NCBI GenBank assembly: GCA_002811645.1
Contig: PDIP01000256.1
Location: 8,853-63,158 of the forward strand
Direction of reading: 5' to 3'
DNA: 54,306 bases
From: Corallochytrium limacisporum Hawaii
Taxonomy: Eukaryota; Protista; Pluriformea
Shown in pieces: positions 10,630 to 20,336 of this stretch. The translations under genes were made by a program, and so were the position numbers. Numbering within the stretch: the first letter of the stretch is position 1; every line of letters begins with the position of its first letter. The notes beneath the pieces are model-generated. The model saw only the letters and a program-made list of their open reading frames with translations, was not told the DNA's origin and did no database searches.

Positions 10630-11174
10630 GTGATAAGAATGTTCAACAATAGTCCGTAGAACTTAGTACAGCGCTAGCGGACTCCTTAAGTACTTGCAGG
10701 GTAGGTGGCCTCCCGGGGCGGATCGTGCCGTTTGGTGCCCGCCGCTCTACTGGTGGGTACACCTGGTCATTCGTTTAAAGTATATGCAATTCCCCTATAA
10801 TAAGCTACTAATGCAAGAAAACTTTCATACACCATACATGTGGAACACCTAAGGACCATTCGAGGCCATTCGGGAACACATTGCTTGGTCGGGAGGGGGG
10901 CCAAAATTCCTCGCCAGTGAATGAGGGGGATTCCCGGACGCATAGCCAGTGCTATTGGAAACGGTATACTGACTGGGAGGGCTAAAGGTTTCCCGTCAGC
11001 CGGCGTCCAGCTGGTACTTCATTCACCGCCTGGAATCTGCAATAAATTACTGCAAATACGCTATACGTGCCTAAGAAGTGCAGACTTGCTCTCTTTCTCT
11101 CTTTCAGGTCTGTACAGAGCGTTCAAAGAATGACTTCCGGCTCCAGAAAATAGCGATACCATTTGAGCACAGAA

Positions 11175-11564
11175 ATGAGTACAGAGCAACCACCGTCCAA
11201 CAGTGTAGTGCGTTCCACAGTACAGTCCACTCCACCGGAGCCCACAGTGAATACAAACGATGTAGTTTCCGATGCAGCGCTGGCAGAACGTCTCGGCCTG
11301 CCTCCTGGTAGCAATCTTCCGACATTTCGGTTGATCACTATGGTAGCTCGGTGGAAACAGAAAGCAAGACGGCGGGCCCGTGGCACTGGGCGACCCTTGT
11401 CCATGTATATGGAGCGCAATCGGCTTGCTGGTGTTGATGAAATGCAGGATCGACTTAGAACCATAGCTTTCTCTGATAAACACTACCTCCCATTTCAACC
11501 ACCAGACTGTTCCATTCATGATGGTTACATTCCTTTACCAAAGCGAAAGTTCCAATACCAATGA
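11175..11564 (+). CDS. Small hypothetical protein (about 129 aa)
   Basis: ATG at 11175. S/T/P-rich N-terminus, then a basic amphipathic segment FRLITMVARWKQKARRRAR. Lies downstream of a GC island, divergent from HSPBP1. No family recognised. Confidence 0.5.
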   Translation: MSTEQPPSNSVVRSTVQSTPPEPTVNTNDVVSDAALAERLGLPPGSNLPTFRLITMVARWKQKARRRARGTGRPLSMYMERNRLAGVDEMQDRLRTIAFSDKHYLPFQPPDCSIHDGYIPLPKRKFQYQ

Positions 11565-12906
11565 AACGCCCCCGCAACTGTAATGGACGAAAACTTAACC
11601 CCTAAAGAACATCATTCAGCATACTCATTAAAGAACACACGCAATAGTTTCAGTGATCCACTTGTCTTGCCTTCAACGTCTCATTCCTTCCGACAGACGT
11701 CCATCTTTTCCATGATGCTGAAAATTACTGGGGACGAGGTGAATACTACCATACTGTCGGGTGCCCAAACTCTTGACTGCTTTACCCTTTAGGTGCGTCG
11801 CTGAGACGCTTTTTTCGCAGCTGCCGGGTCCCCGAATATGGAGCAATTTCTACAATCTCAACCCGAAATCTCACCTCCGACGTTAAATCGCCACATCCCC
11901 TTCTCGCTCGTTTTCCGAACTATAGGCTGGGATGACATCAATCAAATCTCCAAGCGATGGGTGCAGCGAAAAGAAGAAAACTAATCTATTTGCAACAAGT
12001 ACCCGGTGAACGGATCGAGGGGCATCGGCGGGAGAATAATGTGCACATGAGATCAACAATCGTCATCGTGACTCTGTTCTTGAGGTACTGGTTCTCGGAA
12101 AGATACAACAGTATCAATAGCATATTAGAGTATGATCAGTACATACATACGTACGCATTGGGAGCAATCGACACCTTGGCTGCTAATGCAAACTTTTTTC
12201 TGCAAGCATCACACCACAGCACACACAACCGGCTCCGGAAAGCTTGTGGATCTCGCATGTGGAGCTTTAGTGTACGATGAAAGTGTTTTCACTTTTTTGC
12301 CCGGTTCCATATTGTTCTCCGCTTCCATGGACTTCTCTTTTCTTCTTCATAGTAGCTGCAGTGTTGCGCTTCGTTGGGCGGGGAACCGATACGCAGAGGG
12401 AGAACGTCAGTTCATTGTTAGTGGCTGTACGCTGTATGGCTCCAGCGATGCAGGCGTTCATTGAAAGTGGCGCGCTGTGCGCTTCAAGCCCGTACTTCCC
12501 AGTACATTCTTCAAGAACAAGCCCTCTAGGTGTATGCAGCTCTATCCGGTGTGGTGAGTACTTCGGTCACACTGCAAGGGGGATTCTGGAGGAGGACCCG
12601 TCCGTCTGCGTTCGTATTTGTTTTTTTTTGGTACCCTGAACTATCCTATTGTGCTAATAGGTGTGAACCCGCAGGGAGGAGAGTCAGTACGTGGGGAGGA
12701 GATGCCCGACTCGACCCACTCGGAGTGCTCACTGTGCTCACTGTTTACTAGCTGCGCGGCCTTCCCATCGCTCTGAAGCGGACTCAAACCCACTCTGATA
12801 CTATTAGGGTACTAGAACAGTCTCTACGTTGAATTGACCTAACTGAGATTTTCTGCTCGATGCTTGGTCAGTCGATGATCTCGTTGTAGGTTTCGAACAC
12901 TTCAAA

Positions 12907-15900
12907 ATGAAGAAGATTGTCTCGAGGAGCAAGTCTCTCCTACACCGGGACGAAGCGTCCCGGGCCTCAAAGGCCAGTCGCCAGCAGAGATCTAATGGAA
13001 TGGATGGCAGCAAAGAAGCCCTGGACACCAAGAGCAAGGAAGATCTGAGAAAGGATGTGGACAAGGCTAAGGAAGTTGCGGGGAAGCTTACTACAAGCGG
13101 AGGGGAGGCGTCCGTGGGCGGCAAGCAGGTTAATACCCAAGAGGTGCTTCAAAAGCTTCAAAAGAGCAAGAAGGCTGCCAAGGCAATTCCGAGCTTCAAG
13201 AGCGTTGCCCGCAGTGTGCAAATCGGTAAGCAAATGACTCTTGGTGAACGTTTTGTGCAGATCTGGCAGGCTGCCAGCGCTCGAGCGAAAGATGAAAGCG
13301 AGACTTTGTACGTCATCCGCGTCTCCGCCGACAAGGAATACGAGATTCTGGTTGACTATCTGGAGAACGTTCTCAAAGAGTCCATCTTGAATTACGAGAA
13401 ATGCTTCGACAAGGAAAAGGAGTACCTTTTCTTCACGCTCAATGCACGATTGGACCTCCTACTGTTGACTGCAGAGTTCCTAGAAATCGAGAAGCCATTG
13501 AAGGAGCATGCGCCTGACGGAAGCGTTGTGAAAGCGGCATTCCGCTATGATGCACGAACGGAATTCAAGGGAAGTGATCGCATGCGTACTTTCTTAACCC
13601 CACTTGAACGAGATCGATGCATGTGGTACCATCTCAGCCAACTCTCCGTCAAGGCCCAGGATCAGAGCTTCAAGTTCAAGGGCACCGAGTTCTACGAAAA
13701 CGAGAAGATTATCAGTCGATTGGTCTCCGACGAGCACATTGAATGCTGGCCCTTGCACGACGAAAAGATTCGCAACGAATTGCTGTCGGAGTGGCTTGGC
13801 GGCACTGAAGTTGCTTCGGAGTCTATTCGATCCTACTTTGGTGAAAAGATTGGATTCTACTTCGAGTGGCTGAGATGGTACACTCGTTTCCTCGCGTACC
13901 CCGCCGGCCTTGGATTTATTGTTTGGCTCAGCATGTGGCTGCAGGACGAGTCTCCTCTGCTGAGTCTGATCAACGGCATTTTCTTGTCCACCTGGGCCCT
14001 GATGTTCAACACTTTCTGGCGTATTGAGCAACAGTCAGTTGCATTCAAGTGGGGTGTAGATGAGCTCTCCGAAGATAAAGCTCGCCGCCCGGAGTTTCGT
14101 GCTGAAATGATCCGCGATTCCAGCGGAAAATCAGTTCCTCACTTCAAAGAGAGTCCCATCACTGGTGAACTGGAGCCATACTTTTCGTCGGAAAAACGCA
14201 AGTGGATCTACGCTTTAACGTACTCCTTGACTACTTTGAGTATCGTTCTTGCCGTCTGTATTATGTTGTTCTGCTTCTACGCTGCGGATTGGTTGGAAGA
14301 CAATGTCCCTGGGTATCACCTCGGCACCATCCCTTCTGTTGGGTATTCTATCATCATCCCGGTTCTGAATAGCGTCTATCAAGGCTTTGCGAAAAAATGG
14401 ACTGAAATGGAGAATCACAAGTCTGATATTCAATTTGAGAACCACCTTATTTTCAAGCGCTTCTTGTTTGAATTCCCCAACTACTACTCTTCCTTATTCT
14501 ATGCTGCGTTCTACAAGTGTGACATTGCTCTGGTGCGTAGTCAGATGGCAACTATGTTGATCACGTTCCAAATTGTGGGTAACATGATGGAAGTTGTTCT
14601 TCCATACGGCAAAAAGATGTACGAGGTGTACAAGAAGGGCAGTGACATCCAGGCGGATCCCCAGCTGGAAGCGGAGGGTAAGCTCGAGGATTACGAATCC
14701 ACTTTTGATGACTTCCTCGAAATGGTGTCCCAGTTCGGTTATGTCACCATGTTTGGCGCGGTTTGGCCCTTGGCTGCTGTCTTTGCCCTGGCAAACAACA
14801 TTCTGGAGTCTCGCACTGATGGTATCAAGCTCACCATCAACACGCGGAAGCCGCGTGGCATGCAGCTGGCTAATGGTATCGGTACCTGGGGTAAGGTTTT
14901 GCATATTCTCTGTGTGTTCAGCATTTTCACAAACATGCTTTTGATTGGCTACACCACTGACTATTGGTACCAACTGCTGGTGGCTATCGGCTACGAAGGG
15001 GTTAGTCCCCTAGGCCAGGCTGTGTCTTTGCTGATTTTGGAACACGTCATCCTAATCGTGCTGTTCTCTTATGAGCGTTTCACTGAGACCGAAGCAAAAT
15101 GGGTCCGTGATGCCAAACGTCGTCGCGAATATCTACGCAATGAGAAGCTGAACAAAGAACGCCAGGGTAAGCTACAAAAGTTCTTGCAGGACACCAACCA
15201 CGAAGCTGGCCGGGATCTATTCAATGCTAAAGCCATGGACGAAGAGGGTAGGCGAAATCTGAACAAAGACGCTCAGGCCAGTTCCATTTCAGCACCGTCC
15301 AAGGATATCTTCCCGAAAGTTTACACCCATATTCTGGTCTTCATGGCCCTAACCTACTTCTTTGGTGCCTATGGTCTGCACTACCTGTGGGTAATCCTGG
15401 CATACCTGTTGCTGTCCCTCATTGAGGACAAAGATCGTAAGGGCTATGTGAATCGTGCACGTGAGGAGAAGGCTACCATGCAGAGTCTACGCAAAATTGC
15501 TGGTGCCAGCACAGACAATGAGAGCAGTGAATGGCTTAACGCTATCATCAAGACTGCCTGGGTTACTGCTGGTGACTCTATTGCGAAGGATGTCACAAAT
15601 ATTGTTGAGGACGTGATCCGTGCCTACTTAATCTTTCCCATCACCGATATACGTTTGAAGGTGAAGGTTGGTAGCAAGGCCATCAAGTTCAACAACATGC
15701 GCTGTGTACAGCCGGAGGATAAGCCTCATGAGCTTAGTTGGTATTTTGACATTGATCTGAGTACGGATATGGACATTAAGGCAAAGGCCATGATCAAGGC
15801 CGTGCCTCTTATCACCAAAATCGAGGACTTCCAAATGCAGGGTAAGCTGAAGATTCGCATGGTGCTTTCAAAGGACCCACCGATGTACGCTGAGAGTGTC

Positions 15901-17340
15901 TTTGTACAGTTCTTGGAGAAGCCATATATTGATTTCCGTTTGAAGCCACTGATGGGTACAGGTGACATTATGGCCCTGATTCCCGATAACATTTTTAACA
16001 ATATCGTCTACGGCGCCATTAAGGACATGATGGTGTTCCCGAAGGAGCTGGAGGTGCCTCTGAATGGTGCGCCGCGTCCGTCCGTAGTTAAGATTCTGAT
16101 CGAAAGCGGTCGCGACCTGCCTGTCAAGGACATCCTCACCCGGTCTTCAGACCCATACGTTACCATTCAGGTTGGTCTTGAGAAGCGTATCACTGCCATC
16201 AAGAAGCGTAATCTGAACCCCGACTGGAATCAGACATTCGAGATTCCTGTGTGGGGCTATGAGAAAGAAACCTTAAAGTTGGCTGTGTACGACAGTGATG
16301 CCCTGCCTGGTGAGCCCGACGACCTGATGGGTGAAGCCTTTTATCATTTGAAGGGATGTGAACCGGGTCGCGTCATTGAACAAACCGCACGCCTGCAGGG
16401 AGCAAAGAATGGTACGGTCAAGTATAAGCTCATGGTTGTGCCCAAGGTTGCGAATGAGAATGCCAAGGTCGGTTCCATGATCTTCAGCATTACCAATGTT
16501 CCGCAGTATAAGATCTTCCCTAACAAGGCATACAAGTTCATTGCCACCTGCGGTGCTTGTGAGGATTCCACGGATGCTTTCATGGGAATTGACAAGAAGA
16601 TTATCACAGAACTCAAGCTATCCCTACCTGCAATCGTCCCGGAGGAAGATCAGCTGGTCCTGCGTTTCGTCGAATGGGACACTCTGGAGGAGAAACAGAT
16701 TGGTGTTGTTGGATCCAGCAAGGCCACCCTGGCGTCTCTGAAGGAGGGTGAAAACGAGATCTATATGAACCTGAAGGAGACCCCCGAGGTCACTGTTCAA
16801 CTCCTGGCCGAATTCACTGAAGGCTCTACATCCCTCGACTCTGCCCCAGAGGCATCTGTGCGCCCCGGTGGCAAGGCAATCGTGCGACTTTTGAAGGCCG
16901 AGGGTTTGCAGCCTCGTCCTCGCAGCCTTGCGGGCAAGATTGTAGGTAAGGTTACTGGTGCAGGTGAGAAGCCCCGGAGTCCTTTGGTTGAATTCCAGGT
17001 TGCCAGCGAGAGCAAGCTCAGCAACATGATCAGTCACGATAACAATCCTGTCTGGGACCCTGAGGAAGAGACATTTGAATTCAAGGTGAACGATATCTAC
17101 GCTGCCGATGTTGGTATCAATGTTTGGCACAAGAAGAAGGGAGACGACATTAGCAGCACTATCGGATCCACCCGTCTGGTTATTAGTAATCATCTCAACG
17201 ATGGCACTCCAGAAGACATTAAGTTGCCTCTGGTCATTTTTGATGGTGGTGAGGAGATAGACACTGGTGATATAACAGTGCAGTTTGAATGGCACGCGGA
17301 CGAGCGCGTCAAGTCTAAGACCAACCTTGCTGCTGAGTGA
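12907..17340 (+). CDS. Anoctamin/TMEM16 (TMEM16K/ANO10-like) fused to extended-synaptotagmin/tricalbin module (hairpin-SMP-C2A-C2B-C2C)
   Basis: One 1477-aa ORF. TMEM16 at aa ~130-735 (WPLHD, IRSYFGEKIGFYFEWL, ENH, DDFLEMVSQFGYVTMF, NNILESRTD, LEHV). Hydrophobic hairpin at aa ~803-839. SMP at aa ~871-1052 (ESSEWLNAIIKTAW...FLEKPYIDF...MMVFPKELEVPL). C2 domains at aa ~1058-1178, ~1188-1303 and ~1321-1463. Confidence 0.92.
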   Translation: MKKIVSRSKSLLHRDEASRASKASRQQRSNGMDGSKEALDTKSKEDLRKDVDKAKEVAGKLTTSGGEASVGGKQVNTQEVLQKLQKSKKAAKAIPSFKSVARSVQIGKQMTLGERFVQIWQAASARAKDESETLYVIRVSADKEYEILVDYLENVLKESILNYEKCFDKEKEYLFFTLNARLDLLLLTAEFLEIEKPLKEHAPDGSVVKAAFRYDARTEFKGSDRMRTFLTPLERDRCMWYHLSQLSVKAQDQSFKFKGTEFYENEKIISRLVSDEHIECWPLHDEKIRNELLSEWLGGTEVASESIRSYFGEKIGFYFEWLRWYTRFLAYPAGLGFIVWLSMWLQDESPLLSLINGIFLSTWALMFNTFWRIEQQSVAFKWGVDELSEDKARRPEFRAEMIRDSSGKSVPHFKESPITGELEPYFSSEKRKWIYALTYSLTTLSIVLAVCIMLFCFYAADWLEDNVPGYHLGTIPSVGYSIIIPVLNSVYQGFAKKWTEMENHKSDIQFENHLIFKRFLFEFPNYYSSLFYAAFYKCDIALVRSQMATMLITFQIVGNMMEVVLPYGKKMYEVYKKGSDIQADPQLEAEGKLEDYESTFDDFLEMVSQFGYVTMFGAVWPLAAVFALANNILESRTDGIKLTINTRKPRGMQLANGIGTWGKVLHILCVFSIFTNMLLIGYTTDYWYQLLVAIGYEGVSPLGQAVSLLILEHVILIVLFSYERFTETEAKWVRDAKRRREYLRNEKLNKERQGKLQKFLQDTNHEAGRDLFNAKAMDEEGRRNLNKDAQASSISAPSKDIFPKVYTHILVFMALTYFFGAYGLHYLWVILAYLLLSLIEDKDRKGYVNRAREEKATMQSLRKIAGASTDNESSEWLNAIIKTAWVTAGDSIAKDVTNIVEDVIRAYLIFPITDIRLKVKVGSKAIKFNNMRCVQPEDKPHELSWYFDIDLSTDMDIKAKAMIKAVPLITKIEDFQMQGKLKIRMVLSKDPPMYAESVFVQFLEKPYIDFRLKPLMGTGDIMALIPDNIFNNIVYGAIKDMMVFPKELEVPLNGAPRPSVVKILIESGRDLPVKDILTRSSDPYVTIQVGLEKRITAIKKRNLNPDWNQTFEIPVWGYEKETLKLAVYDSDALPGEPDDLMGEAFYHLKGCEPGRVIEQTARLQGAKNGTVKYKLMVVPKVANENAKVGSMIFSITNVPQYKIFPNKAYKFIATCGACEDSTDAFMGIDKKIITELKLSLPAIVPEEDQLVLRFVEWDTLEEKQIGVVGSSKATLASLKEGENEIYMNLKETPEVTVQLLAEFTEGSTSLDSAPEASVRPGGKAIVRLLKAEGLQPRPRSLAGKIVGKVTGAGEKPRSPLVEFQVASESKLSNMISHDNNPVWDPEEETFEFKVNDIYAADVGINVWHKKKGDDISSTIGSTRLVISNHLNDGTPEDIKLPLVIFDGGEEIDTGDITVQFEWHADERVKSKTNLAAE

Positions 17341-17739
17341 TGGCCCAAACTATTCCCTTTGATGGCATATATAAATTTGCAGGAAAACTATCGAAATCCA
17401 CAGACAACGTATACCCCTCGCACCCCCACGAAGTACGAATACGAATAAACGACATATAATAGGTGTGTAAAGAGGGGAAGAAAGAAACATTCAGATCTGG
17501 AGGTGTTGGATGTTTGAGTGCCCCACCCCACCGCCCTGTAGGAACAGGTGCGGCTGACACGCTTCCAGACTATTTCAACGGCACACTTTGCCGGCACAAA
17601 GCTCAATCTACGGGTCCTCCTCACAATTTGAAGAAGAAGCAAGGCAACAAAGAAGACTAGCGCGGTAGGCAATGAAATCCTGTCGAAAAGAAAGGATCAG
17701 CAAGGATATTATCAAGTGTTTCAAAACTCACCGAGTGTC

Positions 17740-18009
17740 ATGACCGATCAGCAAAAGAACAATGCAGCTAAGAAAAGCGCGCAGGACTTCGACCCTCGAA
17801 GGCTGTCAGGGTCCATGGCCTTCAAAATTGTGAACTTTGAAGTCTATAGTAAGCCCAGTGCATGGATCTACATCCCTGGCACCGTAGTCTTTCTCGGGGC
17901 GTGCGCAGGGCTTTGGTGGAACTATATGGAAGGACAGGAACGATGGGAGCATGGTCCTGCAGCAGAGGATGGCACTGTACCGAGTCAGAAGAAGTCCAAA
18001 TGGTCATAA
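17740..18009 (+). CDS. SMIM8: Small integral membrane protein 8-like (mitochondrial microprotein)
   Basis: AFKIVNFEVYSKP followed by one TM helix matches the SMIM8 pattern FRAVNPELFIKP-TM. ATG at 17740. Confidence 0.7.
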   Translation: MTDQQKNNAAKKSAQDFDPRRLSGSMAFKIVNFEVYSKPSAWIYIPGTVVFLGACAGLWWNYMEGQERWEHGPAAEDGTVPSQKKSKWS

Positions 18010-20111: not shown

Positions 20112-20336
20112 TCACTTCTTCTTCAGCAGTTCCTGTAAACGTGCTTGATTCTCTTTCAATGACCGCGGGGGACGCTCTTCTTGAGGCTTCTCGTCTGGGA
20201 TCCAGATCCTATCCTGATGGGGCTCCACGTAATCTTTGTAAAATTCCGGTAAGTTAAAGTAGTAGAACGTTGCCACAGGCATGAAGACGTAAAGCCCAAA
20301 CTTCCAAATTTCTAGATTTGCCCTTGCCCTTGCCAT
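20112..20336 (-). CDS. PET100: Cytochrome c oxidase assembly factor PET100
   Basis: NLEIWKFGLYVFMPVATFYYFNLPEFY; 74 aa. Confidence 0.88.
   Translation of the reverse strand: MARARANLEIWKFGLYVFMPVATFYYFNLPEFYKDYVEPHQDRIWIPDEKPQEERPPRSLKENQARLQELLKKK

What the first reader, a model, noticed from the sequence alone, without database searches (positions are those of the whole stretch)
12907..17340. Natural fusion of a TMEM16 scramblase with an extended-synaptotagmin (SMP-C2) lipid-transfer tether
Seen: one stop-free 4.4-kb ORF. A full TMEM16K/ANO10-like domain (nt ~13300-15110) is followed by a charged linker, an E-Syt-type membrane hairpin (~15310-15420), an SMP domain (~15520-16060) and three C2 domains. 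Known: TMEM16K and yeast Ist2 are ER-resident TMEM16 proteins. E-Syts/tricalbins are ER-PM tethers whose SMP dimers shuttle glycerophospholipids. Scramblase-transfer coupling is established for ATG2-ATG9/TMEM41B/VMP1 and VPS13A-XK, but those partners are separate proteins. Inference: this is a Rosetta-stone, single-chain machine that tethers ER to PM, transfers lipid, and re-equilibrates the ER leaflets. The topology is compatible (the TMEM16 C-terminus is cytosolic) and both modules are dimeric. I do not know of this architecture being described.
Basis: partly seen in the sequence, partly recalled or inferred. Interest (0 to 1): 0.92.

Follow-up and report, generated by a model that had tools for sequence, protein, structure and literature searches.

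The report
Scramblase fused to lipid-shuttle membrane tether
A marine single-celled relative of animals makes one protein that joins a lipid-flipping membrane enzyme (TMEM16) to a lipid-carrying tether between membranes (extended synaptotagmin); the same joined design turns up in distant protists and algae, which suggests the two jobs are naturally coupled and gives one molecule in which to test that.

Summary
Window 12907-17340 is one stop-free 1477-aa ORF: an ANO8/ANO10-type TMEM16 domain (Pfam E 5e-111), a charged linker, an E-Syt/tricalbin-type hydrophobic hairpin, an SMP domain and three C2 domains (the middle one confirmed only by profile and fold). A 4495-nt contig from a probable RNA run of another strain spans just this gene without a joint, with six differences, all synonymous. 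The fusion is not unique: about 16 further TMEM16-hairpin-SMP-C2 proteins or loci occur in Diphylleia (CRuMs, two paralogues), Epipyxis (chrysophyte), Cladosiphon (brown alga) and unnamed protists, with similar junction length and conserved Ca2+ ligands. Trees lean against all fusions forming one clade (AU p 0.02-0.34 by test), so it is either repeated fusion or an ancient fusion with later fissions. No paper describing it was found in the held library. Best reading: an ER-anchored, Ca2+-switched tether that scrambles lipid and shuttles it at contact sites. The domains are shown; activity, location and coupling are inferred. The scan had noted it only on this same DNA.

The parts
12871..17365 (+). 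Span of a transcript-like contig (run X4, RNA status a guess) that covers just this gene, unspliced, six synonymous differences
12907..17340 (+). Whole ORF, 1477 aa, TMEM16-hairpin-SMP-C2A-C2B-C2C
12907..13296 (+). Basic, poorly conserved N-terminal extension (aa 1-130; 29 K+R vs 15 D+E; 9 K+R in the first 30 aa)
13297..13824 (+). TMEM16 cytosolic N-terminal domain (aa 131-306), aligned to TMEM16K from aa 186
13825..15126 (+). Anoctamin membrane domain (aa 307-740), ANO8/ANO10 side of the tree; groove-neck residues Y480 S481 S529 L530 T549 M550 Y612 match TMEM16K Y366 A367 S415 L416 T435 L436 Y507
14590..14820 (+). TMEM16 two-Ca2+ site: E562, D602, E605, E634, D638, acidic in all 11 fusions aligned
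15127..15318 (+). Charged helical linker after TM10 (aa 741-804)
15319..15423 (+). E-Syt/tricalbin-type hydrophobic hairpin (aa 805-839), 31 aa before the SMP domain
15514..16062 (+). SMP (TULIP) lipid-transfer domain (aa 870-1052)
16075..16476 (+). C2A with a full set of Ca2+-binding aspartates (D1075, D1082, D1129, D1131, D1138/D1139)
16477..16842 (+). C2B, divergent, without the Ca2+ aspartate pattern; present in the Diphylleia and L083 fusions, absent from the ochrophyte ones
16870..17301 (+). C2C, no Ca2+ aspartates, basic loops at aa 1337-1348 and 1408-1411

Best explanation
A genuine single-chain TMEM16-extended-synaptotagmin protein, member of an apparently undescribed family scattered across eukaryotes. 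Shown: all modules are present, in one frame, with their functional residues. Inferred mechanism: the TMEM16 dimer and the hairpin sit in the ER with the SMP-C2 arm in the cytosol; the terminal C2 domain(s) grip an acidic membrane, most likely the plasma membrane; a rise in cytosolic Ca2+ loads both the TMEM16 site (opening the lipid groove) and C2A (tightening the tether and freeing SMP, as known for E-Syt1); SMP dimers then shuttle glycerophospholipids across the gap while the scramblase next to them feeds lipid from the luminal leaflet, relieves leaflet imbalance or loosens packing for extraction. One Ca2+ signal would thus switch lipid movement across one bilayer and between two bilayers together.
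For: Single ORF with read support across the linker. Domain calls. ANO8/10-type placement, the branch holding the ER-resident TMEM16K and TMEM16H (48, 50, 51). Five acidic Ca2+ ligands conserved in 11 of 11 fusions; groove-neck 5 of 7 identical to TMEM16K, the other two conservative. C2A aspartates largely kept. Same order of domains and TM10-to-SMP spacing of 136-172 aa in 10 of 11 fusions (207 in one) across Opisthokonta, CRuMs and Ochrophyta. Precedent: Ist2 scrambling sustains Osh6 transfer in vitro (PMC12617493); TMEM16K and TMEM16H sit at contact sites (PMC12618243).
Against: No activity or location data. Scramblase and ion-channel TMEM16s cannot be told apart reliably from sequence; groove residues are poorly conserved across the family (PMC6718402). 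In yeast, Ist2 lies in flat ER sheets and tricalbins in curved ER, and removing most of the Ist2 scramblase domain barely affects PS transfer in cells (PMC13286939). The genome keeps four separate ANO genes and two separate hairpin-SMP-C2 genes, so the fusion is not the only route. The third Ca2+ site of TMEM16K (E259/D615) is lost in this protein (T369/T728). No confident model of how the modules pack (pTM 0.29).
Confidence: 0.6

Rival explanations
1. The fusion is real and ER-anchored, but the TMEM16 part serves mainly as a large anchor or as a Ca2+-gated ion/Ca2+-signalling module at the contact site (as proposed for ANO8); scrambling is absent or not coupled to SMP transfer.
For: The domain is as close to ANO8-like as to ANO10-like proteins in the tree. 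Yeast data show little in-cell need for Ist2 scrambling. Ca2+ ligands are shared by channels and scramblases.
Against: A hairpin anchor is already present, so a ten-helix domain is not needed as anchor; groove and Ca2+ residues are kept over very long branches; the characterised relatives nearest in sequence (TMEM16K, nhTMEM16, afTMEM16) are scramblases.
Confidence: 0.2
2. The polarity is reversed or the partner membrane differs: TMEM16 lies in the plasma membrane, alveolar, contractile-vacuole, endosomal or chloroplast-ER membrane, and the C2 domains reach another organelle or fold back in cis for Ca2+-triggered membrane repair or exocytosis.
For: TMEM16K works at ER-endosome contacts. The ochrophyte forms have only two C2 domains and the last C2 is poorly conserved (9-24% identity to the window protein). 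Net charge of the last 150 aa is acidic in the window protein (17 K+R, 26 D+E).
Against: The hairpin aligns with ER-inserted E-Syt/tricalbin hairpins; ER is where known SMP proteins are anchored (established knowledge); the ANO part is outside the plasma-membrane ANO1-7 branch represented by L010/L011.
Confidence: 0.15
3. Artefact or neutral accident: misassembly, or a chance in-frame join of two neighbouring genes with no joint function.
For: All reads laid were contigs, not raw reads; RNA status of X1/X4 is a guess; the DNA runs may be the source of the assembly.
Against: Four contigs from three studies cross the junction unbroken; the strain differences are all silent; GC3 is even along the ORF (0.55-0.65); the same architecture recurs in unrelated genomes, transcriptomes and metagenomes.
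Confidence: 0.03

Closest known systems
Human TMEM16K/ANO10 (PDB 5oc9) and ANO8/TMEM16H
   Same: Ten-helix anoctamin domain, E 5e-59; two-Ca2+ site acids and groove-neck residues kept; same side of the tree
   Different: Neither carries an SMP or C2 domain; the TM2/TM10 Ca2+ site is lost in the window protein; TM6 Asn444 is Gly558
Extended synaptotagmins / tricalbins / plant SYTs (PDB 4p42)
   Same: Hairpin-SMP-C2A(Ca2+)-C2B-C2C order as in E-Syt2/3; hairpin motif and hairpin-to-SMP distance (31 aa vs 25-47)
   Different: Their N-terminus is a short cytosolic tail, not a TMEM16 domain; the window SMP lacks the LPxW motif that precedes SMP in animal E-Syts and in the ochrophyte fusions
Yeast Ist2-Osh6/7 (PMC12617493, PMC12618243, PMC13286939)
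   Same: ER TMEM16 scramblase whose C-terminus tethers the PM and brings a lipid shuttle next to it
   Different: Osh6 is a separate ORP-family PS/PI4P exchanger bound to a disordered tail; Ist2 is Ca2+-independent; here the shuttle is an SMP domain, covalently attached, with Ca2+ sites in both halves
ATG2-ATG9/TMEM41B/VMP1 and VPS13-XK
   Same: Scramblase paired with an inter-membrane lipid transporter
   Different: Bridge-type transporters, unrelated scramblase folds, separate polypeptides

Membership tests
Anoctamin/TMEM16 | Pfam PF04547 above cut-off over the whole model | tested here: met
   372 bits vs 28, model 1-460
Anoctamin/TMEM16 | Acidic Ca2+ ligands in TM6, TM7, TM8 | tested here: met
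   E562, D602, E605, E634, D638 align with TMEM16K acids and are acidic in 11 of 11 fusions
TMEM16 scramblases (ANO10/TMEM16K type) | Polar TM4-TM7 groove with TMEM16K-like neck | tested here: inconclusive
   Neck 5 of 7 identical, but groove residues are weakly conserved in the family and do not separate channels from scramblases
TMEM16 scramblases (ANO10/TMEM16K type) | Lipid scrambling activity; ER residence | not testable with these tools
   Needs reconstitution and imaging
ANO10 orthologues | Groups with animal ANO10 in a tree | tested here: not met
   Falls in the wider ANO8/ANO10 radiation, outside the clade holding mollusc ANO10-like P0024 and ANO8 P0009
Extended synaptotagmin/tricalbin | SMP domain | tested here: met
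   Pfam PF25669 above cut-off, PF17047 E 6e-6; fold match to Mdm12/Mmm1 Z 13 and 4p42
Extended synaptotagmin/tricalbin | Hydrophobic hairpin 25-50 aa before SMP | tested here: met
   aa 805-839, aligns with E-Syt and tricalbin hairpins; that it inserts as a hairpin is inferred
Extended synaptotagmin/tricalbin | Two or more C2 domains after SMP, C2A with Ca2+ aspartates | tested here: met
Extended synaptotagmin/tricalbin | Hairpin is the N-terminal, sole membrane anchor | tested here: not met
   800 residues with a ten-helix TMEM16 domain precede it
Extended synaptotagmin/tricalbin | SMP dimerisation, lipid transfer, ER-PM localisation | not testable with these tools
   Only single-chain models could be made
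Ist2-type tether | Long disordered tail with Osh6 site and terminal polybasic helix | tested here: not met
   The tail is folded SMP and C2 domains
TMEM16-SMP-C2 fusions as one family | Common ancestry (one clade in both domain trees) | tested here: inconclusive
   ANO: AU p 0.337 against a weak free tree, 0.039 and 0.021 against a better one; SMP: 0.044 and 0.116 with few references. Ochrophyte-like fusions are one well-supported clade in both trees; a Corallochytrium+Diphylleia+L083 clade is not rejected (ANO 0.08-0.75, SMP 0.29)

The most novel reading that the evidence does not exclude
An undescribed, very old eukaryotic protein family (present in Opisthokonta, CRuMs and stramenopiles, arisen once before their split or more than once by convergence) in which a Ca2+-activated scramblase is covalently wired to an SMP lipid shuttle and tether, so that one Ca2+ signal drives trans-bilayer and inter-membrane lipid flow in a single machine; it predicts that separate TMEM16K/ANO8/Ist2 and E-Syt/tricalbin proteins cooperate in animals and fungi.
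Probability: 0.5. Interest if true: 0.88.

Novelty: new variant of a known kind. Interest (0 to 1): 0.76.

Why it matters
Whether scramblases are functionally coupled to shuttle-type lipid transfer proteins in cells is stated as open in a 2026 review (PMC13286939: in vitro support for Ist2-Osh6, no evidence yet in cells). A natural single chain fixes stoichiometry and geometry, so groove, Ca2+-site, SMP and C2 mutants can be compared in one purified protein and one cryo-EM specimen. Its recurrence across distant eukaryotes is Rosetta-stone evidence linking two ER-PM tether classes that yeast genetics treats as separate (Ist2 and tricalbins), and it adds a contact-site component to brown algae, chrysophytes and an animal relative that can be cultured.

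Tried and rejected
Word-indexed homologue searches with the window protein and with an alignment found no other fusion; that blank was a sensitivity limit, as the full HMMER scan, the metagenome scan (42) and a search from a second fusion (59) showed. ESM Atlas searches gave no cluster with both Anoctamin and SMP. Seven literature searches and the anoctamin superfamily survey PMC5868767 gave no description of the architecture; most subscription papers and InterPro architecture tables were not searchable. The organism behind TSA record GILJ (P0006) could not be named. P0031, P0095 and P0007, near the fusions in the ANO tree, were checked: P0031 and P0095 are stand-alone ANO genes, P0007 is on a 1.3-kb contig and cannot be judged. 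Leave-one-out sequence profiles could not show that the C2B domains of the three-C2 fusions are specifically related. The first AU test for one clade was superseded because its free tree was suboptimal. Rejected: misassembly, two genes read as one, a luminal SMP behind a single extra helix (35 uncharged residues with a central Gly turn, like E-Syt hairpins).
Full report
Observation. Window 12907-17340 (+) is one open frame of 1477 codons. Pfam places an Anoctamin domain at aa 307-740 (E 4.7e-111), SMP at aa 870-1052 (SMP_LBD E 6e-6, just under its cut-off; SMP_MUG190-like above cut-off) and C2 at aa 1061-1160. Against solved structures the best matches are human TMEM16K (5oc9, E 5e-59) for aa 186-771 and E-Syt2 SMP-C2A-C2B (4p42, E 1e-18) for aa 869-1176. 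An AlphaFold model of aa 595-1477 (mean pLDDT 58, domain packing unreliable) shows the SMP topology and three beta-sandwiches; its top Foldseek hit is 4p42, and VIA-align matches the SMP part to Mdm12 (Z 13.2, rmsd 2.8 over 165 residues) and Mmm1 (Z 13.3), C2A to plant SYT1 C2A (Z 19.7) and the last domain to a C2 (Z 13.7). The middle domain, invisible to Pfam, is C2 by profile comparison (92.6%) and when folded alone. Between TM10 and SMP lies a charged helix and then 35 uncharged residues (aa 805-839) that align with the hairpins of E-Syt-like proteins, tricalbins and the genome's own two SMP proteins.

Is it one gene? One contig, from a run guessed to be RNA, is 4495 nt long and spans 12871-17365, that is the ORF plus short ends; it differs at six sites, all silent third positions, as expected of a second strain under purifying selection. 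A second probable RNA contig runs from 12972 through the convergent UTP23 gene and, by its length, ends near that gene's start. Limits: these are contigs, not raw reads, RNA status is a guess, and the DNA runs may be the assembly's source. GC3 is even along the ORF.

Host. The assembly is 24,109,830 bases in 286 contigs, with nearly intron-free eukaryotic genes. This matches the 24.1-Mb Corallochytrium limacisporum genome of PMC5560861, an opisthokont relative of animals; the identification is inferred from size, date and style, not from a sequence match. The genome also holds four stand-alone anoctamins, a short fifth fragment, and two stand-alone hairpin-SMP-C2 proteins, so the fusion is an addition to the usual set.

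It is a family. A full HMMER scan of 1.84 billion representatives with aa 280-1477 returned six other proteins that carry Anoctamin, SMP and C2 in the same order: two paralogues from Diphylleia rotans (CRuMs), one from the chrysophyte Epipyxis, one from an unnamed EukProt transcriptome (GILJ), and two from metagenome assemblies. Searching from one of these added the brown alga Cladosiphon okamuranus and four more marine clusters, one with a member filed under the foraminiferan Bolivina, which I take to be from its algal prey or plastid donors. A metagenome scan added L020, L021, L022 and the split locus L054, and an AT-rich, intron-rich genome has an ANO exon followed 117 bases later by an SMP exon and two further C2 exons (L083/L084). 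Split loci were read exon by exon and not joined. That makes about 16 further proteins or loci from at least three supergroups. Identity between groups is only 20-35%, yet the distance from the end of TM10 to the first SMP tryptophan is 136-172 residues in ten of eleven. Two subtypes appear: Corallochytrium, Diphylleia and L083 have a middle C2 and lack the LPxW motif before SMP; the ochrophyte-like forms and GILJ have two C2 domains and keep the motif.

Origin. All fusion ANO domains fall on the ANO8/ANO10 side of the tree, away from the ANO1-7-like L010/L011. The ochrophyte-like fusions are one strongly supported clade in both the ANO and SMP trees. Holding all fusions together was not rejected against a quick free tree (p 0.337) but was against a better one (p 0.039 and 0.021; 32 rows left out for speed, long branches present); for SMP, with only eight references, p was 0.044 and 0.116. 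A Corallochytrium+Diphylleia+L083 clade is not rejected. So either the fusion arose two or more times, or it is very old and later fissions left stand-alone descendants inside its clade. Both readings favour a functional link; neither is shown.

Functional residues. The five acidic ligands of the TMEM16 two-Ca2+ site (E562, D602, E605, E634, D638) are acidic in all eleven fusions aligned. The groove neck named for TMEM16K in PMC6718402 maps to Y480 S481 S529 L530 T549 M550 Y612, five of seven identical. The TM2/TM10 Ca2+ site is lost here but kept in several other fusions. C2A has the full aspartate set; C2B and C2C do not, and C2C has two basic loops, the pattern of E-Syt2/3 as I recall it.

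Mechanism. Shown: modules, order, frame, residues. From established knowledge: TMEM16 termini are cytosolic, both TMEM16 and SMP are dimers, E-Syt hairpins insert in the ER and their C2 domains bind acidic plasma-membrane lipid. Inferred: the protein sits in the ER, tethers through its last C2, and a Ca2+ rise opens the scrambling groove and engages C2A together, so SMP shuttles glycerophospholipid while the scramblase resupplies the cytosolic leaflet, evens the leaflets or loosens packing (about 0.6). Rivals: TMEM16 acts as anchor or ion pathway without coupled scrambling (0.2); another membrane pair or orientation (0.15); artefact (0.03). Cautions come from yeast, where Ist2 and tricalbins occupy flat and curved ER respectively and Ist2 scrambling matters little for PS transfer in cells (PMC13286939).

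Comparison with the known. It works like Ist2-Osh6 (TMEM16 scramblase plus lipid shuttle at ER-PM contacts; PMC12617493, PMC12618243) built from an E-Syt. It is a member of the anoctamin family by sequence and carries a complete E-Syt module, but it is neither an ANO10 orthologue, nor an E-Syt in the strict sense, nor an Ist2. Seven literature searches and the anoctamin superfamily survey found no description of this architecture, and no large Atlas cluster carries both domains. Automatic annotation databases may list it unremarked; I could not query them. Earlier notes of this scan concern only this same locus.

Verdict. Real, conserved, apparently undescribed domain architecture from two known families; new variant of a known kind; interest 0.76.

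Noticed in passing
P0004 (Thraustotheca clavata, OQS02448.1): A 2374-aa oomycete protein with several tandem anoctamin stretches (five Pfam stretches, 1214 bits); either a concatenated scramblase or merged gene models.
   Followed up: no
P0130: A 1118-aa protein with N-terminal C2 domain(s) before an anoctamin domain: a different C2-TMEM16 combination without SMP.
   Followed up: partly
L015:3002-6559 (+) and L016:2670-4856 (-), own genome: Two stand-alone hairpin-SMP-C2 proteins with about 190-270 residues between SMP and the only Pfam C2; they group with each other in the SMP tree.
   Followed up: partly
L014:3595-4035 (-), own genome: A short anoctamin-like fragment (model 377-443) in a 147-aa frame, possibly an exon or remnant of a further family member.
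   Followed up: no
window 12907-13296: Basic N-terminal extension, not conserved among the fusions; could be a second acidic-membrane contact.
   Followed up: partly
window 11163-11564 (+): 133-aa orphan ORF upstream of the fusion with a basic amphipathic stretch; also noted by the scan (s1-558801).
   Followed up: no
window 17716-18009 (+): 97-aa ORF with one hydrophobic helix between the fusion and UTP23, inside the X1 contig.
   Followed up: no
window 20112-20336 (-): 74-aa ORF that looks like a PET100-type cytochrome c oxidase assembly factor (from memory, not tested).
   Followed up: no
L017, L019, L088: In the marine ochrophyte-like contigs the fusion gene is intronless and followed by the same calponin-homology gene (conserved neighbour).
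   Followed up: no
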